Part shown: in pieces, positions 10,081-61,116 of the stretch | How positions within the stretch are numbered: position 1 is the first letter of the stretch | Layout: each line of letters starts with the position of its first letter | Virus record (IMG/VR): IMGVR_UViG_3300042511_000879 | Location: 124,001 to 188,000 of that record | Direction: 5' to 3' (one strand) | Length of the DNA: 64,000 nt | Notes under the pieces: model-generated | The model's database searches: none | Told to the model about the DNA's origin: nothing | What the model saw: the letters and a program-made list of their open reading frames with translations, nothing else | Made by a program: the position numbers and the translations under genes

Positions 10081-13000
10081 TTATGGTAAGTGAGTTTCAA
10101 ACATACATTTTAATACAGTTGGCACATGTAGCGGATTAATAAATGCACATGGATTACCATATAATGCACTTGCGGCATAATCTAACATGAAAGGCGCTTT
10201 ATGATGTATAATTTTAATAACTCTACTTAATGGTCCGGAAACAATTTCACCATAATGTAAACCCGTGACAGGATTAATTGGACCTGCATTTCCATCCCAA
10301 GCAACATATCTAAATGCAACATACATAGGAATATAAACTGGAGAATATGCAAATCTAGATGTAGGCAGATTCTTCTGGGAACGCTTATTTGCCGATGGTA
10401 CATAAGTATAATAGTCAGCGTCCTGTCCTGATTGATCACGATACTTTACTAAAAACTCTTGCCATCTTCCTGAAATCATCGGAGCTAAATTTATATATTG
10501 GTTATGACCTGTTACTTCAAAATGATTAGGTCTATCAACTCCTATAAACCCGGTTGTGATATTATTCTGATGATTTCCAGATCGGTTCCAATAGTTATTT
10601 CCCCATGCAGGATATGGAAAACTTCCATTAGGGTACCATGGCGCCGGTACTATATAACCTCCACCTGGACGATAATTTGGTTTCTTATTTTTCTTTCTAT
10701 AAAGAACCATTTCTATATATATATTATCATATACATTAAATACTTCCGATGACAAATCTTGTGTAATTGCGTATGGTGCAGAATCTAATGTTAATACGCT
10801 TCCGGCGGAATTAGTTACCATATTAATGGAATTAATTACTATAGGATCACCTAACTTAATTGATGGCACTGGCAAATTTCCTTTACCAATTGTCCCTTTT
10901 TCTCCCATCGGTCCAAAAACCAAATTTATTAACTTTTTGGTTGATGATACGTAATAAAGACTAGAATCAAGATACAATGGAGCTCCAATTACTCTTGATA
11001 CAGTTCTTTGTACTACTCCATCTTTCCAATATCTTATATTATAACCATCATATGTTATACTTAATACGGTATTTGCGAAAGTTCCTCCATAAGTTATTGC
11101 ATCTCCATTAATATCAACAGTGACACTTCCATTTTCAATTATATAAAGATCACCTGCTGCGCAGTACCAACAATAATCGATACTAGTATAACTACTATTG
11201 GCTGTTGGATCGCTATTTAATCCAACCATAAGTTGTTCACCAGTATTACTTAATTGAGTTGATACATAAGCTCCTCTAGTATATCCTTCTAAAGAATATA
11301 CTTGTCCATCCCATTGAGCATCATTACCTGTTGCTTTATAGAAAGTATTTGAATTTTCTGCATAAGTTACTCCGCCATTGAATAATGGTGTCCAATTTGA
11401 TGAACCTCTAAAACCTTGGAAACCTTGGGCTCCTTGTATTCCCTGAGCACCTTGGAAACCTTGAGCACCTTGTATTCCTTGAGCACCTTGGAAACCTTGA
11501 GCACCTTGGAAACCTTGGGCTCCTCCGAGTGCAATACTACTCCTAAAACCAACAGTCCCATCACTTTCTTTTACAAGAATATCGGTTGTTGTTCCGGCTG
11601 GAACAGTTGTAATTTTAAGTTTTGCTCCTGTTGTAATGTTTTTGTCACCATCCCAAGTAAACGGTTTTTCAATTTCGCTACCTAGTCCTTGATCACCCCA
11701 TCTTGCACTTAAAAGTTTAATTGACGAAATCCGAATTGGAGCCGGAGTTGTAGCTGTAAGTGTTAAACGAGAATATGCATCTCCGCCATACCAATTAACA
11801 TAAAACCACGCAGCGATTGCATTATGATTATTTGTCGAAGTATGTCTTACTATCCAATTTATATTATCTGCAGAAGTTTCATATACAACATTTTTTATTG
11901 GTGCTGTAGCTGTATAAGTTGAACCAATAACTAACCATTCTCCTATTGACCACTCCATTCCTGTCCAATTCCATCTTACAGAAGTTACTGTAACTCCATC
12001 AGCAACTTCGATTGTTTGATTTTCTTTTTGCGCAAATACTTCTTTATTAAGCGTTGCTGCATTATATGTTACATTATTAGATGAAGTTGAAAATGTTGGT
12101 GAAAACCTAGAAAATGCAAATAAGTCATGCCATAAATAAGGTGATATTGGTGTTTGAGCTACTTGTGTCGTATCACTTGTTATTACCTTATTTGTTAATG
12201 TTCCGTTTTGTTTAAAATTATCAATTCCAAGTGCTATAATAGAACCAGCTCCATTAACTAGGTCAGTTCCATTAAATGTTAAATTAGCTTCAGCATTAGC
12301 AGTATTTGTACCACCATCTGAAGTTAAAACTCTATTATCTGATGGGTTTGTTATTGTTGTAAATCCAGGTCCTTGGAAACCTTGAGCGCCTTGGAAACCT
12401 TGGGCTCCTTGGAAACCTTGAGCACCTTGGAAACCTTGGGCTCCTTGTCTACCTTGAGCTCCTTGGAAACCTTGGGCACCTTGGAAACCTTGAGCACCTT
12501 GTATTCCTTGGGCTCCTTGGAAACCTTGAAAACCCTGGGCTCCTTGTATTCCTTGGGCTCCTTGGAAACCTTGGGCTCCTTGTCTACCTTGAGCTCCTTG
12601 GAAACCTTGGGCACCTTGGAAACCTTGGGCTCCTTGTATTCCTTGGGCACCTTGGAAACCTTGGGCACCTTGGAAACCTTGAGCACCTTGTATTCCTTGG
12701 GCACCTTGGAAACCTTGGGCTCCTTGTATTCCTTGGGCTCCTTGTATTCCCTGAGCACCTTGAAATCCTTGGGCACCTTGAAAACCTTGGGCTCCTTGTA
12801 TTCCCTGAGCACCTTGAAAACCTTGAACACCTTGGAAACCTTGGGCTCCTTGTATTCCTTGAGCACCTTGAAAACCTTGGAAACCTTGGGCTCCTTGTAT
12901 TCCCTGAGCACCTTGTATTCCCTGAGCACCTTGAAAACCTTGGGCACCTTGTATTCCTTGAGCACCTTGGAAACCTTGAGCTCCTTGGAAACCTTGAGCA

Positions 13001-16000
13001 CCTTGGAAACCTTGGGCTCCTTGTATTCCTTGGGCTCCTTGTATTCCTTGGGCACCTTGGAAACCTTGTATTCCCTGAGCACCTTGGAAACCTTGGGCTC
13101 CTTGTCTACCTTGGGCACCTTGAAAACCTTGGGCTCCTTGTATTCCTTGGGCTCCTTGGAAACCTTGGGCTCCTTGTATTCCTTGAGCACCTTGAAAACC
13201 TTGGAAACCTTGGGCTCCTTGTGGTCCTTGTTCTCCCATTGGTCCAAAAACAACATTCTTTAAACCATTAGGTGTACCATTAGTATATGATATTGTACGG
13301 AAGAAAGTAGAATCAAAATATAGAGCGTTACCTATTGCCCTTGCAACAGTTCGTTGTAGAATACCATCTTTCCAATATCTTACATTATAACCATCATATG
13401 TTATTTGTAAAATAGTATCTGATGTATATGCACCTAAAGCAACTATTACACCTCCACTTTCATAGATTTCTACACTATTGTATTCAGTGACATACCATGC
13501 ATAATTAATACCTGGAAAACTAGGCGATGCAGAAGGATTATCACTTAAACCAAATAGTATATAATTAAGATTTGATTGTGGTTGAGCCGATACATAACAT
13601 CCTCTAGTATAACCCTCTAATGAATATACTTCAGCATCAAAAATATCATCGTTACCTATTGCTTTATGAAATATATTTGAATTTGCACCATATACTGTGC
13701 CACCATTAAAAACAGGTGTCCAATTTGCTACTCCTCTAATTCCTTGGAAGCCTTGAGCACCTTGGAAACCTTGGGCTCCTTGTATTCCCTGAGCACCTTG
13801 AAAACCTTGGGCTCCTTGTATTCCCTGAGCACCTTGAAAACCTTGGGCTCCTTGTATTCCCTGAGCACCTTGAAAACCTTGGGCTCCTTGTATTCCTTGA
13901 GCTCCTTGAAAACCTTGAGCACCTTGAAAACCTTGGGCACCTTGGAAACCTTGAGCACCTTGTATTCCTTGAGCACCTTGAAAACCTTGTGCTCCTTGTC
14001 TACCTTGTGCTCCTTGTATTCCTTGAGCACCTTGAAAACCTTGAGCACCTTGAAAACCTTGTGCTCCTTGTATTCCTTGAGCACCTTGAAAACCTTGGGC
14101 TCCTTGTATTCCCTGAGCACCTTGGAAGCCTTGAGCACCTTGAAAACCTTGAAAACCTTGGGCACCTTGTATTCCTTGGGCACCTTGAAAACCTTGGGCT
14201 CCTTGTATTCCCTGGGCACCTTGAAAACCTTGGGCTCCTTGTATTCCTTGAGCACCTTGGAAGCCTTGAGCTCCTTGTATTCCTTGAGCACCTTGAAAAC
14301 CTTGGGCTCCTTGTATTCCTTGAGCACCTTGGAAGCCTTGAGCACCTTGAAAACCTTGAAAACCTTGGGCACCTTGTCTACCTTGGGCTCCTTGGAAACC
14401 TTGGGCTCCTTGTATTCCCTGAGCACCTTGAAAACCTTGGGCTCCTTGTATTCCTTGGGCACCTTGGATTCCTTGGGCACCTTGTATTCCTTGAGCACCT
14501 TGTATTCCTTGAGCACCTTGAGCACCTTGGAAACCTTGAGCACCTTGTATTCCTTGGGCACCTTGAGCACCTTGGAAACCTTGAGCACCTTGGAAACCTT
14601 GAGCACCTTGGAAACCTTGTACTCCTTGAGCACCTTGGAAACCTTGGGCACCTTGGAAACCTTGGATTCCTTGGGCACCTTGGATTCCTTGGGCACCTTG
14701 TATTCCTTGAGCACCTTGTATTCCTTGAGCACCTTGTATTCCTTGAGCACCTTGGAAACCTTGGGCACCTTGGAAACCTTGAGCACCTTGGAAACCTTGG
14801 GCACCTTGGATTCCTTGGGCACCTTGTATTCCCTGGGCACCTTGTATTCCCTGGGCACCTTGGAAACCTTGGGCACCTTGGATTCCTTGGGCACCTTGGA
14901 AACCTTGAGCACCTTGTATTCCTTGAGCACCTTGTATTCCTTGAGCACCTTGGATTCCTTGAGCACCTTGTATTCCCTGGGCACCTTGTATTCCTTGGGC
15001 ACCTTGGAAACCTTGAGCACCTTGTATTCCCTGGGCACCTTGTATTCCTTGAGCTCCTTGGATTCCTTGAGCACCTTGGATTCCTTGAGCACCTTGGATT
15101 CCTTGAGCACCTTGGATTCCTTGAGCACCTTGGATTCCCTGAGCACCTTGTATTCCTTGGGCACCTTGTATTCCTTGAGCACCTTGAAAACCTTGTGCTC
15201 CTTGTATTCCTTGAGCACCTTGAAAACCTTGAGCACCTTGAAAACCTTGTGCACCTTGAAAACCTTGAACACCTTGGAAACCTTGGGCTCCTTGTATTCC
15301 TTGAGCACCTTGAAAACCTTGGGCTCCTTGTATTCCTTGAGCACCTTGTATTCCTTGAGCACCTTGGAAACCTTGTACTCCTTGAGTTCCTTCAATACCT
15401 AATGATGTTACAACATAAGAATAGTATTGACTACCTTCTGTATAAAAAGTAACAGGATGATTACCTGAAGATTGATCGACTACATAGACATTAACAATCA
15501 TTCTATCCGTAGGATCAATTTGATATGATGCAGGTATTACTAAATCTACGTAATTTTCAACTGGTATAGTGGATTCAATCCAACCTATAAGTACTTGATT
15601 TGTTGATATTGGCGCTGCTGCGTATGGTGTACCGGTACTATCTGCTAGTTGTATAGTACAGAATGTATCTGTATTAAAACCAGTTGCTCCTTTTAAGAAA
15701 TGTAAATGAAATTTTTGAGGTCCTGGTGGAATAACATTAACTCCTAATCCACTTGCATCAGTAATATATGTTTGAACTAATACTGGAGTTGTTCCAGTAG
15801 TTGTTACTGTAATAGTTTGAACCGATCCAGTGGTTGGTAATGTACCTATTTGTTTATATTCTAAAGGTGTCTGTGTTACTGATTGATTAAAATAGTATAT
15901 CTGTCCGGATGAAACGCCTAATGGACCTTGGTCACCTTGAAAACCTTGAGCTCCTTGTATTCCCTGAGCACCTTGGAAACCTTGGGCACCTTGAAAACCT

Positions 16001-17172
16001 TGGGCACCTTGAAAACCTTGAAATCCTTGGGCTCCTTGTATTCCTTGGGCACCTTGAAAACCTTGGGCACCTTGAAAACCTTGAAATCCTTGGGCACCTT
16101 GAAAACCTTGGGCACCTTGAAAACCTTGAAATCCTTGGGCTCCTTGTATTCCCTGAGCACCTTGGAAACCTTGGGCACCTTGAAAACCTTGGGCACCTTG
16201 AAAACCTTGGGCACCTTGAAAACCTTGAAAACCTTGGGCACCTTGAAAACCTTGAAAACCTTGGGCTCCTTGTATTCCCTGAGCACCTTGGAAACCTTGG
16301 GCTCCTTGTATTCCCTGAGCTCCTTGTATTCCCTGAGCACCTTGTAATCCTTGGGCTCCTTGAAAACCTTGGGCTCCTTGAAAACCTTGTATTCCCTGAG
16401 CACCTTGAAAACCTTGGGCACCTTGTATTCCCTGGGCGCCTTGAAATCCTTGAGCACCTTGTATTCCTTGAGCACCTTGTATTCCCTGAGCACCTTGAAA
16501 ACCTTGGGCACCTTGGAAACCTTGGGCTCCTTGAAAACCTTGAGCACCTTGAAAACCTTGTATTCCTTGGGCTCCTTGTATTCCCTGAGCACCTTGAAAT
16601 CCTTGGGCTCCTTGTATTCCCTGGGCGCCTTGAAATCCTTGAGCACCTTGAAATCCTTGGGCTCCTTGTATTCCCTGAGCACCTTGAAAACCTTGGGCAC
16701 CTTGGAAACCTTGGGCTCCTTGTATTCCCTGGGCACCTTGTATTCCTTGGGCTCCTTGTATTCCCTGAGCACCTTGAAAACCTTGGGCACCTTGGAAACC
16801 TTGGGCTCCTTGTATTCCCTGGGCGCCTTGGAAACCTTGAGCACCTTGAAATCCTTGGGCTCCTTGTATTCCTTGGGCACCTTGAAAACCTTGGGCACCT
16901 TGAAAACCTTGGGCGCCTTGGAAACCTTGAGCACCTTGTCTACCTTGGGCACCTTGTATTCCTTGAGCACCTTGAAATCCTTGAGCACCAGTTCCTTGGA
17001 AGCCTTGAGCACCTTGGAAACCCTGAGGACCATTAGCTGGCCCTTGAGGACCTTGAGGTCCTGTGTCAACAGTTCCACCTAGATTTTTTAGTGAACCATA
17101 TTTGTCATGGACGAATACCGGACCTAGGTCTGTGCTGGAATTTCCATATTTATCTAGTCTTTGTATGTTCAT
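10081..17172 (-). CDS. Giant collagen-like (Gly-X-Gln) fibre protein, 2363 aa
   Basis: Four GAQ/GFQ/GIQ triplet blocks separated by globular domains. Confidence 0.85.
11404..11522 (-). repeat. Collagen block 4 (about 40 aa)
   Basis: Gly-X-Gln periodicity; boundaries approximate. Confidence 0.85.
12368..13235 (-). repeat. Collagen block 3 (about 290 aa)
   Basis: Gly-X-Gln periodicity; boundaries approximate. Confidence 0.9.
13738..15392 (-). repeat. Collagen block 2 (about 550 aa)
   Basis: Uninterrupted Gly-X-Gln periodicity; boundaries approximate. Confidence 0.9.
15921..17063 (-). repeat. Collagen block 1 (9-nt unit tandem repeat)
   Basis: GGTGCTCAA/GGTTTCCAA/GGAATACAA-type units; boundaries approximate. 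Confidence 0.9.
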
Positions 17173-52325: not shown

Positions 52326-52730
52326 TTATACAGTATGTTCGATTCTTACACGGATGCAATTCTGAGGCAATCTATGAATATGTCTATAGTTATTAATATA
52401 ACCCATCATATTTGCACTACCAACTGCATTTGCAGAGTGTATTACAACATCAACAACATTAGCTCCATCCAACCATTGATTGACCAACCATTTAGTGCAA
52501 TCCATTCCAGTCTTTTCTGTAATATTATCATAGTTCAATTCGTAATTGTGGTACACATTTTTATGCCATTCGGCCATTGCAGTGTCTCCTAGGTCATGGT
52601 CTAATGAAATCAAGTCAATATTTTCAAGTCCAATTTCGGTAACTTTTTCTACAAATTCATCGTAACTTCTAACAACAACCCAGTCTTTTTCAACCGGTGT
52701 TCTTACGTCATCTAAATATACTCTAATCAT
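52326..52730 (-). CDS. Cyclic-phosphate-processing receiver domain protein
   Basis: YLDDVRTP, VRSYDEF, ISLDHDLG, TG.D, IHSAN.VG..NM. Confidence 0.75.
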   Translation of the reverse strand: MIRVYLDDVRTPVEKDWVVVRSYDEFVEKVTEIGLENIDLISLDHDLGDTAMAEWHKNVYHNYELNYDNITEKTGMDCTKWLVNQWLDGANVVDVVIHSANAVGSANMMGYINNYRHIHRLPQNCIRVRIEHTV

Positions 52731-54603: not shown

Positions 54604-55344
54604 TTATATTTTTTCAAAAGTTGGTTTCAGCCACATCCCATTTTTAAAGATTAAATCTAAGAATCCTGGAATATCTTGGTCAACGTCAGCAAGTAGTCTA
54701 AAACTTCTTGGAGTATCATGTTTCATCATTTTTATGATTTCCTCTCTGATTCTCTCTCCACTTACAGTTTGTTCTAGTTTCTGTAAAATGTTTGGTTGCT
54801 TCATCGCATTCCAAATATCAGCGTGCATTTGAAAATCTTTAGTGATAGTAAATCTTAGTGCTCTTAGCAAACGAAGTGGGTCATCCATTAGGGTAGCGCT
54901 AGCGTGCATCGGAGTTCTTAAAATTCCAGCCTTTAAGTCCTCTACTCCACCGAATAGGTCAATAAGATTACCATCAACATCTTCTGCAAGGGCGTTTAGG
55001 GTAAAATCTCTACGAATTAAATCGTCTTCCAATGTTCCAAGTTCTAGGATAGGTCTACGGGTTCCTTCAACATATCCAACCTCTTTACGGGCCATTACAA
55101 AATCTGCAACCAGTCCGGCGAACTGATGGTCTTTTGGAAACTTAGCACGAATCGTAAAACAATCTGGAGTACTTAAGAAGATTTCAAAACCTTGGTCCGT
55201 CATCCAGTTTGTCATGATTTGAAAACCATCCTCAACCGTAAAACCTTTAGTATCTTCCAACACGAAAGTGAAATCTATATCTTTAGAGTCCAATCCAAGG
55301 AATTTATCTCGAATACATCCTCCAACACGGTAAATCTTTGCCAT
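54604..55344 (-). CDS. cca: tRNA nucleotidyltransferase (CCA-adding, class II), short form
   Basis: VGGCIRD, KDIDF, ARKE, EDDLIRRDFTLNAL, D.FGG..DL, DDPLR.LRA.RF, ER..EE..K. Confidence 0.85.
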   Translation of the reverse strand: MAKIYRVGGCIRDKFLGLDSKDIDFTFVLEDTKGFTVEDGFQIMTNWMTDQGFEIFLSTPDCFTIRAKFPKDHQFAGLVADFVMARKEVGYVEGTRRPILELGTLEDDLIRRDFTLNALAEDVDGNLIDLFGGVEDLKAGILRTPMHASATLMDDPLRLLRALRFTITKDFQMHADIWNAMKQPNILQKLEQTVSGERIREEIIKMMKHDTPRSFRLLADVDQDIPGFLDLIFKNGMWLKPTFEKI

Positions 55345-55366: not shown

Positions 55367-55425
55367 TGTAAATATAAACAAAAAACTCCAGACCGTAAAA
55401 TCTGGAGTGTTAAAATTATGTTAAA
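55367..55425 (-). promoter_or_regulatory. Early-type promoter cassette 8, with terminator hairpin
   Basis: Box; ACTCCAGA-TTTTACGG-TCTGGAGT-TTTTT; TATATTTACA. Confidence 0.8.
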
Positions 55426-55888
55426 GTTTTTGATTAATCTTTGTGGTTAGTGCGCCAATCGCATCGTCTAGATTTTCAAAGATTGGAATGTTATATCGAG
55501 TACATACAATGTCGACATTTCCTTTTCGCCAAAACCCTTTAGGACAACATACGATAATATTATCTCTGACATGTAAACCTAATTCTAGGAGACTAATTGG
55601 ACTCTTAGTTTCTGGAGAGAAGTACATGAAGATTATATCTGCATTTTCAAGACTATTCATTTCCCAGTTTACTTGTTGGTTAAATTGAGGATTTGATTGT
55701 TCTTGAGTCCAGCTAGCATCCCAATCATCACGTCTTGGATTGTAAAGTGTTACATTGGTATTAATGTAATTGTTCTCGATTCTCTTTTGCCAATCTTCTG
55801 CCTTTCCCATTTCTATAGAACCGGCTAAAAATACTGAACATTTATTTTCTTGGTTTTGGTACCTGCTATTTGGTTTAATTACTTGCAT
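55421..55888 (-). CDS. Nucleoside 2-deoxyribosyltransferase-like protein
   Basis: VFLAGSI, YNPRR.DW, QV.WE...L..AD.I, SPISLLELG. Confidence 0.85.
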   Translation of the reverse strand: MQVIKPNSRYQNQENKCSVFLAGSIEMGKAEDWQKRIENNYINTNVTLYNPRRDDWDASWTQEQSNPQFNQQVNWEMNSLENADIIFMYFSPETKSPISLLELGLHVRDNIIVCCPKGFWRKGNVDIVCTRYNIPIFENLDDAIGALTTKINQKL

Positions 55889-55890
55889 AC

Positions 55891-56604
55891 TTATATTATT
55901 TTAATTGCGTTGTGTTTTTTAATTTTAAATGATTGTCGAAGTTTTTCCTCTTCTTCATTATAATGGTAACCCCATCCCAGTTTTATGTTATCTTCCGATA
56001 GTCTTGAACGGAATAGACGGTATCGATTAACCATATAGTCCTCTCCAATATATTTATAATGCAGTAGGTTATATTGATTTAATGAATATGTAACATCACC
56101 CCGAGGGGCTGCCTCATGGCATCCTGGATAGAAATTGATTTCAGAGATTTTGCTTTTATCAAATGCAATACTTTTATTATAATAATGAGTATACTCACCA
56201 TATTGTAAGGTATCAATGCTAATATCTGCTGGGTCTTCGGACATATTAACCATATTCCAACCGGTAAATTTTATTATTGATGTTCCCAGTCCAGATTCAT
56301 ATTCTAATTGTTCTCTAGTAATGAGACCAAGTTCATCAGCATCACAGACAATATTCCAGTCGGTTTTTGAATCTTTCCAGCAATTGTTTTTAATTTCTAG
56401 ATTTTTTCTATCAGAAAAATTATCTCCAGTGTCGTATTGAATAACCTCACAATTAAATTCTTTTGCAATTTCTACAGTTCTGTCCGTTGATTGGTTATTG
56501 TATACAACAATTCGGCAGTCCGGAAATGATGCTCTATAATGTTTAATAAAAAACGGTAGCATAAGTTCTTCATTATATGCTACCGTGTAAATTGTTATTT
56601 GCAT
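55891..56604 (-). CDS. Glycosyltransferase family 2-like protein
   Basis: YNEE..LPFFI.HY, .YNN.STD.T, W.IVCDADE, LLHYKY. Confidence 0.75.
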   Translation of the reverse strand: MQITIYTVAYNEELMLPFFIKHYRASFPDCRIVVYNNQSTDRTVEIAKEFNCEVIQYDTGDNFSDRKNLEIKNNCWKDSKTDWNIVCDADELGLITREQLEYESGLGTSIIKFTGWNMVNMSEDPADISIDTLQYGEYTHYYNKSIAFDKSKISEINFYPGCHEAAPRGDVTYSLNQYNLLHYKYIGEDYMVNRYRLFRSRLSEDNIKLGWGYHYNEEEEKLRQSFKIKKHNAIKII

Positions 56605-56870
56605 TCGTGTATTGGATTTTTACAATTTCCTTTATGTGAACCCCATCGAGAACTTCCCGAACCTGCAACTATATACTCGCAACCTTCAAGAGTATAAACT
56701 CTATAGCGTTGATCGTAATATTTTGAAGTACTATCTAATTCGTAACGACTAGCACTAGTATTTTGATGTGGGTCTTTATAATTATCTGGTTTGCAACTAG
56801 TAACCATAAAGATTACTAGTGCAGCCAAAATTACTATTATTAAAGGTACTGGTGAGTACTGTCTATTCAT
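56595..56870 (-). CDS. Lipoprotein
   Basis: Signal peptide with lipobox VTSC. Confidence 0.6.
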   Translation of the reverse strand: MNRQYSPVPLIIVILAALVIFMVTSCKPDNYKDPHQNTSASRYELDSTSKYYDQRYRVYTLEGCEYIVAGSGSSRWGSHKGNCKNPIHECK

Positions 56871-58399
56871 TATAGATTAGTTAAACGTTTTCTAATTTCT
56901 GTAAGAGTTGTTTGGTTTTCAAATTGACCATTCAAATAGATAGTTTTTAACAATCCAGACTTTTCATCTTCCCAAGTACATTGGTCTTCTAGTATGTAGA
57001 AATTATCTTCTACAGCTCCAGCAACTCTTAATAAACCTTTTGCAGATTTTTTAACTCCATCATCAGTGATTGGGTCTTTAAAGATTTCTCTTCCAACTCC
57101 ATCAACTTCTACATAGGTGGCTTTCATTGCAAAACCAAAAGTATCTCTAGTGTTATATTGGTATGTAAAACTTCCAACACCTAATACAATGTTTGTACTT
57201 GCAAAACCTTTTGCCTCTAATCTTGTGAAGATTTGTTCAGCACGGTCTAATGTAATACTGTCTCCGTAGATTGCTCCAATATGAGGGTCTAATACTTTAT
57301 AACCTTGGTCGTTAATAGTTCCACCGAATACATCCCAAAGTAATTCAATAACACCTTTTACTTCTGGTTTGTTTAAATATTCATCAGTAGGATTAACTTC
57401 TGCTACTCCACCTAAGTAAGCAACTACGTCATTATCGCTATGAACATTTGTTTTGATTATATTAGCACCGCAAATAATATCTACAGGGTCTCCTGAGTCA
57501 GGACGAATAACTAATTTACCATCTCTTGCAAGGATTTCCTCTTTTAAGGTAACGATATGTTCAGTACAAACTTTCCATAAGTCCCATGTGTCAGAAACTA
57601 CTGAAAGAATTCCTGTTGGATATGTCTCCAATAATCTACGGAAGGTTCCAATCTCATCATCTTTACTTCCAGCACACATTACTGAGTGCTCTGTTGCATT
57701 TACCGAACCAGATACAAATCCAGTTTCATTGTAATATTTACGGGCTCCAAAGATTGCAGGTAAACTATCTGAACCAGAGAAACTTGTTAAGTGTCCTAAT
57801 CCTGAAGAGATTGTAGCATCTATAGAGTCCATACCTCTCATTGAGAAATCATGGGCTTGCCAATCTACGAACCAACCTTTTTCGGCATCAGTTTTTAATT
57901 GCCATTCTGTAAATAATTTACGGTAAGCATGGGAAATAGTTGCACTTGTCATTGGTTTCCATAACAAGTTAGAAATAACTGTCTCCAAGTAATTGGTAAT
58001 CCAATAGAAATCTGGATGTGTGTTGTAAATTGTCAAGACAGGTACTCTCATTGGTACTGTAGCTCCTTCCTCAATCGATTTAACTGCGATTGGTAGGTAA
58101 CCCAAATCATGTAGGGCTTCAAAGTGGCTAACATCGTAGTCAGTATTTAAGTACATTGACAATTCGTTTTTCATTTCGCCACAAACTTTGTCTTTTGGTT
58201 TGCTAAAGAAATCTTTGTCAAAAGCCTCGTGGATTTGTTTCATTACCATTTGTTGGCCGAAACTTACTAGTTGGTTGCAACCTTTAGGAGCATATTTATT
58301 ACTACGAGGAGTAAAGTTCGAATAGACCAACGTAGTCCCTTTTGGATATTGTTGGTGATGTCCTGTTTTGTAACCGTCTGTTAAAAATAATGGGTTCAT
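56870..58399 (-). CDS. nadV: Nicotinamide phosphoribosyltransferase-like (NAMPT/NadV; possible Namat)
   Basis: TDGYK..H..QYP, LE, HDFS.RG, GSD, ATEHSV, SVVSDTWD, IRPDSGDP, IYGDSIT, GVGS, RDT.GFA.KAT, KDP.TD...K.SAKG. Confidence 0.9.
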   Translation of the reverse strand: MNPLFLTDGYKTGHHQQYPKGTTLVYSNFTPRSNKYAPKGCNQLVSFGQQMVMKQIHEAFDKDFFSKPKDKVCGEMKNELSMYLNTDYDVSHFEALHDLGYLPIAVKSIEEGATVPMRVPVLTIYNTHPDFYWITNYLETVISNLLWKPMTSATISHAYRKLFTEWQLKTDAEKGWFVDWQAHDFSMRGMDSIDATISSGLGHLTSFSGSDSLPAIFGARKYYNETGFVSGSVNATEHSVMCAGSKDDEIGTFRRLLETYPTGILSVVSDTWDLWKVCTEHIVTLKEEILARDGKLVIRPDSGDPVDIICGANIIKTNVHSDNDVVAYLGGVAEVNPTDEYLNKPEVKGVIELLWDVFGGTINDQGYKVLDPHIGAIYGDSITLDRAEQIFTRLEAKGFASTNIVLGVGSFTYQYNTRDTFGFAMKATYVEVDGVGREIFKDPITDDGVKKSAKGLLRVAGAVEDNFYILEDQCTWEDEKSGLLKTIYLNGQFENQTTLTEIRKRLTNL

Positions 58400-58403
58400 A
58401 GTA

Positions 58404-58649
58404 TTAATATTTAGATATTGTTCTTAAATAAATTGCTTGTTGTCTAATTCCATACTCTCGGGTAAGTAAGCGGTCTGCATAATCATCACGCATAACAACC
58501 ATAACATTATTAGACATTTCAGTTGCATCATGAAAACTATCTCTTCCTAGTATCATTCCTAAAGAATCTGCAAAGGATAGAATTAAATCTGCTAATTGTT
58601 TTGCATTTTTACATTGATTAACTGCTTCCCATTTTTGTAATTCTGTCAT
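58404..58649 (-). CDS. Hypothetical protein
   Basis: First gene after a promoter cassette. Confidence 0.5.
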   Translation of the reverse strand: MTELQKWEAVNQCKNAKQLADLILSFADSLGMILGRDSFHDATEMSNNVMVVMRDDYADRLLTREYGIRQQAIYLRTISKY

Positions 58650-58671
58650 AGTGTATCTGTTTTAATTATAA

Positions 58672-58730
58672 TGTAAATATAATCAATAGTTTTAAATCGG
58701 TAAAATTGGGAGTGTTAAAATTATGTTAAA
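58672..58730 (-). promoter_or_regulatory. Early-type promoter cassette 9
   Basis: Box; TTTTACCG-N16-TATATTTACA. Confidence 0.75.
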
Positions 58731-58920
58731 TTTCTTCAGGGTCTGGTAAACCTTCTACAATTGTAAACATAATTGGAAATGCCCATGCAAGCCTATTGGT
58801 TGCTCCATAATCTCCAGTCCAAAAGCAATAAGAACTATGTTCAATTGTCATTTCTCGGCATTCAATTTTTTGTATGGTAGTATTACCATCGTGCTTGTGT
58901 ATTACTTTATAATTTCTCAT
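58726..58920 (-). CDS. Hypothetical protein
   Basis: 64 aa ORF. Confidence 0.5.
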   Translation of the reverse strand: MRNYKVIHKHDGNTTIQKIECREMTIEHSSYCFWTGDYGATNRLAWAFPIMFTIVEGLPDPEEI

Positions 58921-59555
58921 GGTTTATAAATTACAACTGACACTTGCATGTCCCTTAATTCTGTTTGAATAATGTTTTTAATCCTGTTCCAATCTCCACC
59001 AGCCAGTCCGGCTCCAATTTTTGGAAGTCCAATACGTTTACCTGCAAAAGTCTTATTGATTTTACGTAGACAAAGCGCAAGTGCCTCATAATCAATTGGC
59101 TTGGCAACACCATCTTTATGGTTAGCACCATAATTGTACTGTGTGTATGAATTCACAACTATAATATCTTTAACACCTGGTTGACCTGATGACTTTGAGT
59201 TCATTGGAACTGCAACTCCGGGTTCTGTAACCGATGGATGCTTAAACCATAGATATTGGTGTTGATAATCAATAGTACCAAGTTTATTAATGTCTCCACG
59301 ATTTTTGGTTTTTACCAAATGCTCGTAACCCTCGTCGTCATACTCAATATATTGAGTTAGTTCCATTTCAAATTCATCGCATCCAAACGCATCTGCCATT
59401 TGAGGCGCTATTCCGGCGCCCATAGTACAAAAACAATTACACCCATGGGTGATTACATCAAATGTACCCTGTTTTGCCAAACGGATTAGGTCACCTTGGA
59501 TTTCTTGATAGTTTGTTCCCATCGCTGATACTATTTGTTCGTTCAAATATCCCAT
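58917..59555 (-). CDS. Macro domain protein (ADP-ribose binding/hydrolase)
   Basis: GDL, HGCNCF..MGAGIA, N.YTQ, DY.AL..CL, IGLPKIGAGLAGGDW. Confidence 0.85.
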   Translation of the reverse strand: MGYLNEQIVSAMGTNYQEIQGDLIRLAKQGTFDVITHGCNCFCTMGAGIAPQMADAFGCDEFEMELTQYIEYDDEGYEHLVKTKNRGDINKLGTIDYQHQYLWFKHPSVTEPGVAVPMNSKSSGQPGVKDIIVVNSYTQYNYGANHKDGVAKPIDYEALALCLRKINKTFAGKRIGLPKIGAGLAGGDWNRIKNIIQTELRDMQVSVVIYKP

Positions 59556-60058
59556 TATGCAAATCTAAATTGTTTAAGGAAATCTCTTAGGAATATGATT
59601 TGGTCTGCTTCCTCTTCAGTTTCGGCAAAATTCATCTTCCATTCATAAAATTGTTTTTCAAGACTTCTACCTCCTAGTTTTTCTTCTATAGCATCTCCTT
59701 CATAATCTGGCCAAGCAACTTTATCATATACTCTATCATCAACTAAGAAAACTACGGCAGTTAATTGGTCTCCCAAATCTGGTTCGTGGAATTCTCCAAT
59801 ACGGATGCATTGGTCATATAATGTAAAATAATGATTGTTAAGAGTTCCTTTGATAAAAGCCGTATTGTTAGTAGTACCTCCATTTAGAATTATAAAGGTC
59901 TTGTCTCTTCGGGCCCATGTCTGGTACTCTGGAGTCTCTGAGAATTCAAGTCCGTATTCAACAACAGCATGACCGAACTGGATGCCTTGCTGAATTGGAC
60001 TAATATTGTAAGGAACTAGTCCGTACATTCTAAATTCTCTATTGTCTCTATTGTTCAT
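59555..60058 (-). CDS. Peptidyl-tRNA hydrolase 2-like protein
   Basis: MY.LV...IS.IQ..IQ.GHA..EY...F.EPD.....TAV. Confidence 0.5.
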   Translation of the reverse strand: MNNRDNREFRMYGLVPYNISPIQQGIQFGHAVVEYGLEFSETPEYQTWARRDKTFIILNGGTTNNTAFIKGTLNNHYFTLYDQCIRIGEFHEPDLGDQLTAVVFLVDDRVYDKVAWPDYEGDAIEEKLGGRSLEKQFYEWKMNFAETEEEADQIIFLRDFLKQFRFA

Positions 60059-60242
60059 CAGTTGCTTTCTTAATTTCTTCAGTTAATATCCTTTCTAGTT
60101 CGGTAGTTGCATCAATTCCAAGATGCTGAAAGAATTCTGATTCTACTACTTCTACCGTTTGTAGTTCATATTTAGAGCCTAAAATTGGGTCCTGAACTAA
60201 TACTAATTGCTCTACAAATATTGTTTTTGGTTTTTTTGACAT
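60048..60242 (-). CDS. Hypothetical protein
   Basis: 64 aa ORF. Confidence 0.45.
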   Translation of the reverse strand: MSKKPKTIFVEQLVLVQDPILGSKYELQTVEVVESEFFQHLGIDATTELERILTEEIKKATDEQ

Positions 60243-60243
60243 G

Positions 60244-61116
60244 TTATATTACGTTAAATTGTGTTGTGTTTGTTTTTTGTTCATATTCATTATCTGCAAC
60301 ATTTCTATGAGAATTTGTAGTATAAATGCCTTCGAAGTATTTGTTTAATTCTCCAAATCCGGTGCTAAAAATACCATGAGTTACTACTAGATAAACTTTA
60401 GCAGTTGGTCTGCTTCCTTTGATTGCTTTTGCAAGTTCAATAAAGGTTCTACCACCATCGCAGATATCATCAATGATAACATATTTTAAGTCATCGTGTT
60501 GATTCAATGTAGGAATCTCAGTTCTTAGAATATTTCCACTTCGCATATCACGGACCTTAGTTGCGGTAATAATATTTTCAATTCCAAACTTCTTTGCAAC
60601 ATCATAGATTTTTTTGTAGGCTCCAGCATCTGGACTTACTAAACAAATTCTGTCTTGGGCACCAATCTTATTATCAATCTTTGATAGTGCATGTTTTGCA
60701 AGTGTGTGATTATCTACCTTCTCGTAGTTATTCAAACATGCTTCTAAAACATCTGAATGAGGGTCTAATGTAATTACTGTTACAAAGTTTAAGGAATTGA
60801 TAATTGGGCAAATAACTTGCTTTAAGTAATTAACTCCGCCTTCAACAAATTTACGGTCTGAACGGGCTCCTATAAAATAAGGAACATAAAGTGCAATTTC
60901 TCTGGTTGGTTTAATATTACGAACGGCTGCAGTTGCGCAAATAATCAGTTCTAAGTCTTTAAAGGTATTTAAACGTGAATTGATTTTCACAGCGTCTTCG
61001 TATCTTAATAAGTCTTTCCAATCCGTAAGGTCTACTGTTTGCTGACCGTCAGGAAATTGACTAATTTTGTATTTAATCTGTGATTTTTCTGGGTTAACCA
61101 AGTCTAATATTATCAT
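60244..61116 (-). CDS. prs: Ribose-phosphate pyrophosphokinase-like (Prs; possible Adps)
   Basis: F.DG.Q, VPY..GARSDR, LDPHS, SPDAGA..K, K.RD, IIDDICDGG.TF, VTHG.FS. Confidence 0.85.
   Translation of the reverse strand: MIILDLVNPEKSQIKYKISQFPDGQQTVDLTDWKDLLRYEDAVKINSRLNTFKDLELIICATAAVRNIKPTREIALYVPYFIGARSDRKFVEGGVNYLKQVICPIINSLNFVTVITLDPHSDVLEACLNNYEKVDNHTLAKHALSKIDNKIGAQDRICLVSPDAGAYKKIYDVAKKFGIENIITATKVRDMRSGNILRTEIPTLNQHDDLKYVIIDDICDGGRTFIELAKAIKGSRPTAKVYLVVTHGIFSTGFGELNKYFEGIYTTNSHRNVADNEYEQKTNTTQFNVI

What the first reader, a model, noticed from the sequence alone, without database searches (positions are those of the whole stretch)
56870..61116. NAMPT-like + macro domain + PRS-like cluster resembling the NARP1 NAD+ reconstitution anti-defence pathway
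Seen: a 509-aa NAMPT/NadV homolog and a 290-aa Prs homolog lie 1.8 kb apart with a macro-domain gene between them, and no NMN adenylyltransferase is present in the window. Established: phage NARP1 uses a Prs homolog (Adps; ADPR to ADPR-PP) and a NAMPT homolog (Namat; ADPR-PP plus nicotinamide to NAD+) to rebuild NAD+ destroyed by Thoeris, DSR and SIR2-type defences. Macro domains bind or release ADP-ribose. Inference: this could be NARP1 in a Bacteroidota phage, extended by a macro domain that frees protein- or DNA-bound ADP-ribose as substrate and may counter DarT-type toxins.
Basis: partly seen in the sequence, partly recalled or inferred. Interest (0 to 1): 0.7.

Follow-up and report, generated by a model that had tools for sequence, protein, structure and literature searches.

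The report
Phage NAD+ rebuilding operon (NARP1-AP)
This lake-water jumbo phage carries the already described three-enzyme pathway that rebuilds NAD+ from the fragments left by bacterial NAD+-destroying defences, and a fourth, uncharacterised enzyme gene travels with the pathway in phages and in Bacteroidota chromosomes.

Summary
On the minus strand lie a 290-aa Prs-like gene (60244-61116), a 212-aa macro-domain gene (58917-59555) and a 509-aa NAMPT-like gene (56870-58399). No NMN adenylyltransferase gene is in the window.

The two core enzymes are NARP1 enzymes, not housekeeping Prs and NadV:
- The NAMPT homologue has the Namat adenine-clamp motif GSFTYQYNTRD. It scores 517 bits against SpbetaL1 Namat and about 220 against Nampt. 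It falls on the Namat side of a 100/100 tree split.
- The Prs homologue has the Adps-type PP loop DDICDGGRTF and fails every curated Prs model.

The macro protein is a homologue of Adpp, the ADPR-1''-phosphate phosphatase of Vibrio phage Gary. The trio is therefore NARP1-AP, described in a January 2026 preprint: a new member of a known kind.

One lead goes beyond the finding. A nucleoside-2-deoxyribosyltransferase-like gene (PF15891, 55421-55888) ends the same gene string. It stays linked to NARP1 and NARP2 genes in many phages. In Bacteroidota chromosomes it sits inside NrtR-regulated Adps-Namat operons. I found no paper that makes this link.

The parts
60244..61116 (-). Adps-like gene (290 aa, P0002): PRPS-fold ADP-ribose pyrophosphokinase, first step of NARP1
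   Evidence: phrog_619 7e-69. Below the cutoff of every NCBIfam Prs model, for example 86 against 113 bits for TIGR01251. phmmer scores: 111, 103 and 98 bits to ICP1, Gary and Felixounavirus Adps, against 41 bits to E. coli Prs. PP loop DDICDGGRTF. Equivalents of F18, R87, F92, H121, D161, K185, D212, D213, D216 and F221 are kept, and there is no Prs C-terminal extension.
60048..60242 (-). Small ORF, 64 aa, unknown
   Evidence: No family hit. Partly conserved in close relatives only.
59555..60058 (-). 167-aa PTH2-like hydrolase (P0003); a variable passenger between Adps and the macro gene
   Evidence: phrog_3668 'hydrolase' 2e-17. Atlas feature search points to PF01981 PTH2 clusters. Present in only 11 of 75 related loci and not next to NARP1 in cultured phages.
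58917..59555 (-). Adpp-like macro-domain protein (212 aa, P0004): predicted ADPR-1''-phosphate phosphatase
   Evidence: phrog_335 'phosphatase' 3e-41. BLASTP 3e-18 to the Vibrio phage Cody Adpp. 35% identity to the characterised Gary Adpp, with invariant H.CNC..MG.G.A, KLG, N.Y.QY and G.P.IG.GLAGGD blocks. Fold matches: TARG1 5.6e-7, Poa1p 1.2e-6.
58726..58920 (-). Small ORF, 64 aa, unknown
   Evidence: No family hit. Kept in a few close relatives.
58404..58649 (-). Small ORF, 81 aa, unknown, conserved directly upstream of Namat
   Evidence: tblastn matches at 45-100% identity just upstream of Namat in more than 15 related contigs. No family hit.
56870..58399 (-). Namat-like gene (509 aa, P0001): nicotinamide ADP-ribose transferase, second step of NARP1
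   Evidence: Best PDB hits are 9W5X and 9W5W, SpbetaL1 Namat, at 517 bits; Nampt scores 217-227 bits. SCH motif GSFTYQYNTRD. The residues that contact NAD+ are conserved when read from the alignment. 100/100 tree split from Nampt.
56595..56870 (-). 91-aa ORF with a lipoprotein-type signal; role unknown
   Evidence: Sequence read. Conserved after Namat in many relatives.
55891..56604 (-). 237-aa family-2 glycosyltransferase-like ORF; a variable passenger
   Evidence: Pfam Glyco_tranf_2_4 2.9e-10. Present only in the closest relatives.
55421..55888 (-). 155-aa nucleoside 2-deoxyribosyltransferase-like protein (P0006, PF15891); last gene of the string and a candidate further accessory enzyme
   Evidence: Pfam 1.4e-33. 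PDB 4MCJ 3.8e-28, uncharacterised. Model pLDDT 92.8; fold next nearest to the MilB and Rcl nucleotide N-glycosidases. Linked to Adps, Namat or Nampt in 47 of 75 phage loci and 18 of 80 bacterial loci. Control bait.
55385..55408 (-). Terminator-like hairpin (10-bp stem plus T run) 13 nt after the NDT-like gene
   Evidence: It is the strongest of seven terminator-like sites in the 12 kb scanned, and seven is no more than the shuffled expectation (5.5 +/- 2.7). It suggests the co-directional gene string ends here (inference).

Best explanation
The locus is a NARP1-AP NAD+ reconstitution module in a roughly 234-kb lake-water jumbo phage.

Proposed mechanism, inferred from homology to characterised enzymes and not assayed here:
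1. When a host defence cleaves NAD+, the Adps homologue transfers pyrophosphate from ATP to ADP-ribose, giving ADPR-PP.
2. The Namat homologue joins ADPR-PP to nicotinamide and regenerates NAD+.
3. The macro protein (Adpp homologue) removes the 1''-phosphate from ADPR-1''-phosphate, the product of RES-type NAD+ phosphorolysis. That product then also enters the pathway.

The genes sit in one co-directional string together with variable passenger genes. The string ends with a PF15891 NDT-like gene and a terminator-like hairpin. The module resembles the NrtR-regulated Adps-Namat operons of Bacteroidota chromosomes. The NDT-like protein is probably a further enzyme that feeds an NAD+-derived N-glycoside into the same pathway; this last point is weaker.
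For: Namat:
- The motif GSFTYQYNTRD fits the published consensus GS-X-Phi-X-Phi-X-Phi-TRD exactly and is identical to that of SpbetaL1 Namat.
- Every Namat-clade ORF in hand has this motif type. The Nampt-type enzymes (RB16, Aeromonas phage 31 NadV) have GMGGGLLQ...RD.
- In the alignment D13, Y15, F189, S190, R192, D215, A242, the catalytic His, R306, D308, G360, D361 and G390-D400 are conserved. R40 is replaced by K35-Y36, a variant the paper describes.
- An IQ-TREE split with 100/100 support puts the window protein with the ICP1, Gary, Cody and Felixounavirus Namats.

Adps: as listed under parts.

Adpp. The Adps-macro-Namat order is kept across relatives, including a tight three-gene operon in L011, and it is the architecture of the characterised Gary operon.

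Other NAD+ routes were not found in the record: no Nudix, no PnuC, no NatV-like gene.

The NDT-like link.
Against: - No enzyme was assayed and no transcript data exist; only DNA runs hold the locus.
- The macro fold search cannot separate a Poa1p-type phosphatase from TARG1- or DarG-type glycohydrolases.
- Identity to the characterised Adpp is only about 30-35%, and P0004 carries two insertions that Adpp lacks.
- The three genes are not contiguous; five unrelated ORFs are interleaved.
- Namat enzymes keep some PRPP activity in vitro, so some NMN formation cannot be excluded.
- The virus record is about 77% complete, so absent genes may lie in the missing part.
- The terminator-like site is a consensus match only.
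Confidence: 0.78

Rival explanations
1. The module is NARP1, but the macro protein is not an ADPR-1''-phosphate phosphatase. It would instead remove ADP-ribose from protein or DNA (anti-DarT, TARG1- or DarG-like) or deacetylate O-acetyl-ADPR.
For: Fold matches to TARG1 and the DarG macro domain are as good as those to Poa1p. There is a weak local match to the NCBIfam DarG model. A relative (L008) and the Bacteroidota operons carry a NADAR domain in the same module, so reversal of ADP-ribosylation is a theme in this neighbourhood.
Against: The DarG model scores 33 bits against a cutoff of 250 and covers only residues 165-212. The protein is a clear homologue of the biochemically characterised Adpp and occupies the same operon position. 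No DarT-related signal was seen.
Confidence: 0.13
2. The locus is ordinary nicotinamide salvage. A Prs makes PRPP, a NadV makes NMN, and an NMNAT encoded elsewhere finishes NAD+ (NARP2-like).
For: Generic Pfam and NCBIfam names (NAPRTase, PRK09198, Pribosyltran) fit. A HIGH-family nucleotidyltransferase domain with GRFQPFTLGH and ISATAVR motifs exists at about 177 kb. Its best PDB matches are NadM-type NMNATs (2QJO 3.9e-4, 1F9A 1.2e-3).
Against: The Namat clamp motif, the Adps PP loop, the failed Prs cutoffs and the tree placement all argue against it. The distant domain scores 26-29 bits against NMNAT models whose cutoffs are 127-409. It is fused to an RNA-ligase-like N-terminal domain. Sources mostly name its homologues 'cytidyltransferase-like'. 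The record holds no Nudix domain.
Confidence: 0.04
3. The chemistry is the same, but the main role is not counter-defence. The module would be an auxiliary metabolic operon taken from Bacteroidota, where NrtR-controlled Adps-Namat operons recycle ADP-ribose by-products. The phage would use it to keep NAD+ up, or to recycle by-products of its own RNA-repair enzymes.
For: Chromosomal operons of the form NrtR, Adps-like, NADAR, Tpt1, Metallophos, NDT-like, Namat-like and Macro occur in Bacteroidota. nrtR-prs-nadV operons have been known since 2008 (PMC2330246). The phage neighbourhood is rich in tRNA and RNA repair genes: a CCA-adding enzyme, cREC, a PTH2-like protein and RNA ligases, with Thg1-like and HAD_SAK_2 genes in relatives.
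Against: The phage has no Tpt1 and no NrtR-type Nudix domain. Characterised phage NARP1 and NARP1-AP operons act as counter-defence. In L086 the NDT-like gene sits next to the anti-Pycsar gene Apyc1.
Confidence: 0.05

Closest known systems
NARP1-AP of Vibrio phage Gary (Adps, Adpp, Namat); bioRxiv 10.64898/2026.01.28.702374
   Same: It has the same three protein families in the same order. The Namat clamp motif type, the Adps PP-loop type and the conserved blocks of the Adpp macro domain are shared.
   Different: The Gary operon is three contiguous genes. Here five extra ORFs are interleaved or appended. The macro protein is 212 aa against 158, with two insertions. Identities to the characterised proteins are 33-35% (Adps, to ICP1; Adpp, to Gary) and 44% (Namat, to Gary). 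The phage lineage is different: a lake-water jumbo phage with PAU-, PTm1- and Lak-like terminase relatives.
Core NARP1 of Bacillus phage SpbetaL1, Escherichia phage Bas63 and Vibrio phage ICP1 (Osterman et al. 2024; PMC12774641; PMC13586617)
   Same: The Namat SCH motif is identical to that of SpbetaL1 (517-bit PDB hit). The Adps catalytic and acceptor residues match ICP1 Adps.
   Different: Those systems have two genes and lack the macro and NDT-like genes. The SCL loop here has Lys-Tyr where SpbetaL1 has Arg40.
NARP2 of Vibrio phage KVP40 (Nampt plus NatV, an NMNAT-Nudix fusion)
   Same: It also rebuilds NAD+ with a NAMPT-family enzyme. NDT-like and macro genes also accompany NARP2-type loci in some IMG/VR phages (L076).
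   Different: The window enzyme lacks the Nampt-type GMGGxLLQ segment and lies across a 100/100 split from the Nampt clade. No NatV-like gene or Nudix domain is in the record.
RyDEP-extended NARP1 of mycobacteriophage DyoEdafos (bioRxiv 10.64898/2026.05.28.727677)
   Same: The logic is the same: an accessory enzyme inserted in the NARP1 operon converts another NAD+-derived molecule into ADPR.
   Different: No RyR-domain protein is in this genome. The accessory enzymes here are a macro-domain protein and possibly the NDT-like protein.
NrtR-regulated prs-nadV operons of bacteria (Rodionov et al. 2008, PMC2330246) and bacterial NARP1 homologues (PMC12774641)
   Same: Bacteroidota chromosomal operons carry an Adps-type PP loop, a Namat-type motif, a PF15891 gene directly upstream of Namat, and a macro gene.
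   Different: The bacterial operons have the ADPR-sensing repressor NrtR, Tpt1, a metallophosphoesterase and a canonical PF01661 macro domain. The phage has none of these and uses the Adpp-type macro domain.

Membership tests
Namat (NARP1 step 2) | SCH adenine-clamp motif GS-X-Phi1-X-Phi2-X-Phi3-TRD with aromatic X (PMC12774641) | tested here: met
   The protein has GSFTYQYNTRD, identical to SpbetaL1 Namat. The motif separates all Namat-type from Nampt-type ORFs in hand.
Namat (NARP1 step 2) | SCL loop supplies a stacking residue: Arg at position 3, or Lys/Tyr followed by a stacking residue | tested here: inconclusive
   The alignment puts K35-Y36 opposite SpbetaL1 R40-V41. This fits the Lys-then-stacker variant, but the loop is 2 residues longer and no complex structure was modelled.
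Namat (NARP1 step 2) | Conserved Nampt-like catalytic core: F189, R192, D215, catalytic His, R306, D308 | tested here: met
   All are conserved in the alignment to 9W5X.
Namat (NARP1 step 2) | Falls in the Namat clade, separate from Nampt, and is encoded with an Adps | tested here: met
   100/100 split. An Adps-type gene lies 1.8 kb upstream.
Namat (NARP1 step 2) | Prefers ADPR-PP over PRPP and makes NAD+ directly | not testable with these tools
   This needs an enzyme assay.
Adps (NARP1 step 1) | PRPS fold with the remodelled donor-binding PP loop (ICP1 C215-S220 region, DDIC/SDGGxxF) | tested here: met
   The window has DDICDGGRTF, identical to Felixounavirus Adps. E. coli Prs has DDMIDTGGTL.
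Adps (NARP1 step 1) | Catalytic Lys185 and acceptor residues F18, R87, F92, H121, D161, D212, D213, D216 | tested here: met
   All aligned positions are conserved in A1. F92 is aromatic here but Val in E. coli Prs.
Adps (NARP1 step 1) | Loss of the C-terminal alpha11-alpha12 regulatory and filament module of PRPS | tested here: met
   P0002 ends with the phage Adps sequences, about 20 residues before the E. coli Prs C-terminus.
Adps (NARP1 step 1) | Converts ADPR plus ATP to ADPR-PP | not testable with these tools
   This needs LC-MS.
Canonical ribose-phosphate diphosphokinase (Prs) | Reaches the curated cutoff of a Prs family model | tested here: not met
   The best score is TIGR01251 at 86.4 bits against a cutoff of 113. 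All 11 Prs models are below cutoff.
Adpp (NARP1-AP phosphatase) | Poa1p-like macro-domain protein homologous to Vibrio phage Gary KNV71_gp137 | tested here: met
   BLASTP 3e-18 to the Cody orthologue. 35% identity to Gary Adpp with shared invariant blocks. Poa1p is among the top fold hits.
Adpp (NARP1-AP phosphatase) | Encoded within or next to the Adps-Namat operon | tested here: met
   It lies between Adps and Namat here and in most relatives.
Adpp (NARP1-AP phosphatase) | Dephosphorylates ADPR-1''-phosphate to ADPR | not testable with these tools
   This needs an enzyme assay. The residues mutated in the preprint appear only in a figure that is not held.
NARP2 | Nampt-type enzyme (GMGGxLLQ segment) plus an NMNAT (NatV or NadM-Nudix) in the genome | tested here: not met
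   The motif is Namat-type. There is no Nudix domain. The only HIGH-family domain is fused to an RNA-ligase-like domain and lies far below the NMNAT cutoffs. The record is about 77% complete.
NARP3 | PnuC-like nicotinamide riboside transporter plus a NadR-like enzyme | tested here: not met
   No PF04973 match in the record.
DarG-type antitoxin macro domain | Reaches the NCBIfam DarG equivalog cutoff | tested here: not met
   33 bits against a cutoff of 250, covering residues 165-212 only.

The most novel reading that the evidence does not exclude
The PF15891 nucleoside-2-deoxyribosyltransferase-like protein (55421-55888) is an undescribed enzyme of extended NAD+ reconstitution. It would be an N-glycosidase, or a base-exchange enzyme, that converts an NAD+-derived N-glycoside into ADP-ribose or ribose-5-phosphate. 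Candidate substrates are a base-exchanged ADPR conjugate such as a Thoeris signal, deamido-NAD, or damaged NAD. This would widen the range of defence products that NARP1 and NARP2 can recycle, as Adpp and RyDEP do. The same enzyme would serve the NrtR-regulated ADPR-recycling operons of Bacteroidota.
Probability: 0.3. Interest if true: 0.75.

Novelty: new member of a known kind. Interest (0 to 1): 0.5.

Why it matters
The finding as given adds one more NARP1-AP carrier: an uncultured freshwater jumbo phage, probably of Bacteroidota. It confirms that the published sequence rules (the Namat clamp motif and the Adps PP loop) cleanly sort distant homologues.

The added value is the neighbourhood. 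A PF15891 gene stays linked to Adps-Namat or Nampt in many gene orders. At 55-70% bait identity it is linked in 72% of loci, against 12% for a neighbouring control gene. It also sits inside Bacteroidota operons that collect several enzymes acting on ADP-ribose derivatives (NADAR, Tpt1, a metallophosphoesterase and a macro domain).

This gives a concrete, testable candidate for a further 'funnel' enzyme in the NAD+ arms race. It also links phage NARP1 to a chromosomal pathway whose purpose has been an open question since the prs-nadV operons were described in 2008.

Tried and rejected
Things that could not be done:
No host-clade Prs or NadV set could be drawn, so the Adps side rests on one canonical Prs (E. 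coli), the PDB PRPS hits and the NCBIfam cutoffs rather than a broad tree.
- The PDB copy holds no Adps structure. P0002 hits only PRPS, at about 1e-11.
It was redone with IMG/VR rows only.

Searches of the 234-kb record that found nothing:
- RyR (RyDEP), Nudix, NADAR, Thg1, Tpt1, PnuC.
- Pfam Macro at E <= 0.001. The macro gene is too divergent for that model.

Uninformative results:
- The sigma-70 promoter scan found 63 sites against 54.5 +/- 7.4 expected.
- Rfam found nothing in 50-64 kb.
- Sequencing-run search returned only lake-water DNA runs and no usable RNA, so co-transcription is untested and read laying was not used.
- A FastTree of the 155-aa NDT-like family is too poorly resolved to date gene transfers.

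Considered and rejected:
- The 167-aa ORF as a pathway member. It is variable, and in cultured phages it is not next to NARP1.
- The 623-aa protein as NatV.
- NDT-like homologues in cultured Caulobacter, Xanthomonas and Brevundimonas jumbo phages are not next to NAD genes, so the link is not universal.

No complex prediction was sent, because published pull-downs show no stable Adps-Namat complex.

Full report
**Observation**

The window is bases 24942-88941 of a 234,467-bp IMG/VR virus record that CheckV estimates to be 77% complete. Every sizeable ORF between 52 and 64 kb is on the minus strand.
- 60244-61116, 290 aa: Pfam Pribosyltran and Pribosyl_synth; phrog_619 'ribose-phosphate pyrophosphokinase' 7e-69.
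- 58917-59555, 212 aa: Pfam Macro at only E 5e-4, below the gathering score; phrog_335 'phosphatase' 3e-41.
- 56870-58399, 509 aa: NAPRTase 6.6e-38 and NAMPT_N; phrog_448 4.5e-191.

The only cytidylyltransferase-superfamily match in the record lies at 177 kb, outside the window. The window is clearly phage. It holds a 2,363-aa collagen-like tail fibre, other tail proteins, a thymidylate synthase, an ATP-dependent DNA ligase and three tRNAs. Near-identical DNA occurs in many lake-water metagenomes.

**The NAMPT homologue is a Namat**

The structural paper on SpbetaL1 Namat (PMC12774641) defines a 'selectivity clamp' that makes the enzyme prefer ADPR-PP over PRPP. The conserved half of the clamp is the motif GS-X-Phi-X-Phi-X-Phi-TRD, with aromatic X.
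- The window protein reads GSFTYQYNTRD.
- Its best solved relatives are 9W5X and 9W5W, the SpbetaL1 Namat structures, at 517 bits. Xanthomonas and human Nampt score 217-227 bits.
- Reading that alignment with the paper's numbering, D13, Y15, F189, S190, R192, D215, A242, the catalytic His, R306, D308, G360, D361 and G390-D400 are conserved. A362 is Ser. R40 of the variable loop is replaced by K35-Y36, the 'Lys then stacking residue' variant that the paper describes for Bas63.
The motif sorts them without exception. ICP1, Gary, Cody, a Felixounavirus and all close relatives have GS[FY]T[YL]Q.[NV]TRD. RB16, Aeromonas phage 31 NadV and four IMG/VR sequences have GMGG[GA]LLQ...RD.
- An IQ-TREE of 46 sequences splits these two groups with 100/100 support. 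The window protein is on the Namat side.

**The Prs homologue is an Adps**

- It fails the curated cutoff of all eleven NCBIfam Prs models; the best is 86 bits against 113.
- It hits solved PRPS enzymes only at about 1e-11.
- It scores 111, 103 and 98 bits against the Adps of ICP1 (structurally and enzymatically characterised, PMC13586617), Gary and a Felixounavirus, and 41 bits against E. coli Prs.
- In alignment A1 it keeps the equivalents of F18, R87, F92, H121, D161, K185, D212, D213, D216 and F221 of ICP1 Adps.
- Its PP loop, DDICDGGRTF, is the phage type. ICP1 has DDICDGAASF and E. coli Prs has DDMIDTGGTL.
- It lacks the C-terminal extension that PRPS uses for regulation and filament formation.

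**The macro protein**

The preprint of Osterman et al. (10.64898/2026.01.28.702374) reports several points:
- 15% of NARP1 phages carry a macro-domain gene in the operon.
- The Vibrio phage Gary protein (Adpp, KNV71_gp137) dephosphorylates ADPR-1''-phosphate, the product of the RES-domain defence aRES.
- Plain NARP1 fails against aRES, while the three-gene NARP1-AP succeeds.

I fetched the Gary and Cody operons. The window protein matches the Cody Adpp at 3e-18. It aligns to Gary Adpp at 35% identity, with shared invariant blocks H.CNC..MG.G.A, KLG, N.Y.QY and G.P.IG.GLAGGD. It is longer because of two insertions. An AlphaFold model (pLDDT 78) matches TARG1, Poa1p, BT1257 and DarG macro domains about equally well. 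The fold therefore places it in the right macro clade but cannot fix the substrate. The DarG equivalog model scores 33 bits against a cutoff of 250. I therefore read the trio as NARP1-AP. The phosphatase activity is inferred from homology and operon position.

**Other NAD+ routes**

The record has no Nudix domain, no PnuC and no RyR-domain protein.

The single HIGH-family domain is the C-terminus of a 623-aa protein. It has NadM-like motifs (GRFQPFTLGH, ISATAVR), and its best PDB hits are NadM-type NMNATs at 4e-4 and 1e-3. However:
- it scores 26-29 bits against NMNAT models whose cutoffs are 127-409;
- its N-terminal 400 residues look like an RNA ligase in the atlas feature search;
- its homologues are mostly named only 'cytidyltransferase-like'.

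It is not a NatV- or NadR-type partner. A residual NMNAT activity cannot be excluded.

**Anatomy and conservation**

Sixteen IMG/VR relatives found with Adps (58-100% identity) keep Adps and Namat together.
- Most keep the macro gene. L011 is a tight Adps-macro-Namat operon.
- The 167-aa PTH2-like ORF, the GT2-like ORF and two small ORFs are variable passengers.
- The 81-aa ORF upstream of Namat is widely kept.
- Relatives insert other genes between the macro gene and Namat: Thg1-like, HAD_SAK_2, NADAR and an AAA/BCS1 ATPase.
- One relative has a group I intron in Namat.
- A terminator-like hairpin at 55408-55385 follows the last gene of the string.

**The extra lead**

The last gene (55421-55888) is a PF15891 'nucleoside 2-deoxyribosyltransferase-like' protein (1.4e-33).

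*Links in phages*
- Used as bait, it returned 75 IMG/VR loci. 47 of them have Adps, Namat or Nampt within 6 kb, in at least seven gene orders. These include Adps-NDT-Namat, Adps-NDT-macro-Namat and Adps-macro-NDT-Namat.
- It also sits in NARP2-type loci. In L076 the order is NatV-like NMNAT-Nudix ... macro-NDT-Nampt. In L086 it sits next to the anti-Pycsar gene Apyc1.

*Control bait*
- I baited with the neighbouring CCA-adding enzyme gene.
- At 55-70% bait identity, NAD genes lie within 6 kb in 6 of 49 control loci, against 33 of 46 NDT-baited loci.
- Inside the control set, 16 of 18 loci with the NDT-like gene have NAD genes, and 16 of 20 loci with NAD genes have the NDT-like gene.

*Bacterial genomes*
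- The family has at least 526 relatives in bacterial genomes.
- In 18 of the best 80, an Adps-type Prs (DDICDGGRTF) and a Namat-type enzyme (GIGSYTYEYVTRD) flank it. 17 of the 18 are Bacteroidota, including the isolate Chitinophaga rupis DSM 21039.
- One such operon reads NrtR, Adps-like, NADAR, Tpt1/KptA, metallophosphoesterase, NDT-like, Namat-like, Macro.
- NrtR is the ADPR-sensing repressor of the 'prs-nadV' operons described in 2008, whose logic was then called unexpected (PMC2330246).

*Fold and limits*
- The P0006 model (pLDDT 92.8) matches the uncharacterised Parabacteroides protein 4MCJ. The next matches are the nucleotide N-glycosidases MilB and Rcl, YtoQ and true NDTs.
- Homologues in cultured Caulobacter, Xanthomonas and Brevundimonas jumbo phages are not next to NAD genes.
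- I found no paper linking this family to NARP.

*Reading*
My reading is an inference. The accessory enzymes of these operons all turn ADP-ribose derivatives into free ADP-ribose, and the NDT-like protein is one more such enzyme, acting on an N-glycosidic bond.

**Host**

The terminase is most similar (30-45%) to those of uncultured huge phages, Sphingomonas phage PAU, Tenacibaculum phages PTm1 and PTm5, a Flavobacterium phage and the Lak phages. Together with the shared module in Bacteroidota chromosomes, this makes a Bacteroidota host plausible but unproven.

**Verdict**

The NARP1 reading is well supported. The macro 'extension' is the published NARP1-AP, so the finding is a new member of a known kind. 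The PF15891 link is, as far as I could search, new and directly testable.

Noticed in passing
L001:1333-3204 (minus); G000:C1 about 176.0-178.1 kb, outside the window: A 623-aa fusion protein. The N-terminal part looks like an RNA ligase (atlas feature search). The C-terminal part is a NadM-like HIGH nucleotidyltransferase domain with GRFQPFTLGH and ISATAVR motifs. Its best PDB hits are NadM-type NMNATs at about 1e-3, far below the NMNAT family cutoffs.
   Followed up: partly
window 52326-52730, 54604-55344, 59555-60058 (all minus); L008:8275-11548; L009:9117-9920: The NAD+ module sits among tRNA and RNA repair-type genes: cREC_REC, a CCA-adding tRNA nucleotidyltransferase and a PTH2-like hydrolase. 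Relatives insert Thg1-like, HAD_SAK_2 and NADAR genes between the macro gene and Namat. The region may be a combined repair and counter-defence island.
   Followed up: partly
L092:8324-8665; L021:6450-7311 and 10213-11127: The Namat gene of L092 is split by a group I intron (Rfam RF00028, 70.8 bits) that is followed by a 308-aa ORF. In L021 (the same contig as L056) both Adps and Namat are split by inserts of about 0.9 kb that did not reach any Rfam threshold.
   Followed up: partly
L126:2637-8465 (a Bacteroidia MAG); the same order occurs in more than 10 Bacteroidota genomes, e.g. L117, L132, L153, L166: A chromosomal operon: NrtR, Adps-like, NADAR, Tpt1/KptA, metallophosphoesterase, PF15891 NDT-like, Namat-like, Macro. 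It looks like an ADPR-sensing operon that collects enzymes acting on ADP-ribose derivatives and feeds them to a bacterial NARP1.
   Followed up: partly
L086:5995-7250: The NDT-like gene is immediately followed by a homologue of the anti-Pycsar protein Apyc1 (Pfam 2.1e-22). A Nudix protein and a Nampt lie 3 kb upstream.
   Followed up: no
window 58404-58649 (minus): An 81-aa ORF with no family match is kept directly upstream of Namat in more than 15 related contigs, even where the other small ORFs are lost.
   Followed up: no
window 56595-56870 (minus): A 91-aa ORF after Namat begins with a lipoprotein-type signal (hydrophobic stretch ending ..VTSC). It is conserved in many relatives.
   Followed up: no
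window 10081-17172 (minus): A 2,363-aa collagen-repeat tail-fibre gene coincides with a GC rise to 0.43-0.45, against about 0.33 elsewhere. Long spurious ORFs overlap it on both strands.
   Followed up: no
G000:C1:108427-109020 (L105), outside the window: A separate 377-aa RNA ligase (PF09414, 1.1e-17). The record has no Tpt1/KptA.
   Followed up: no
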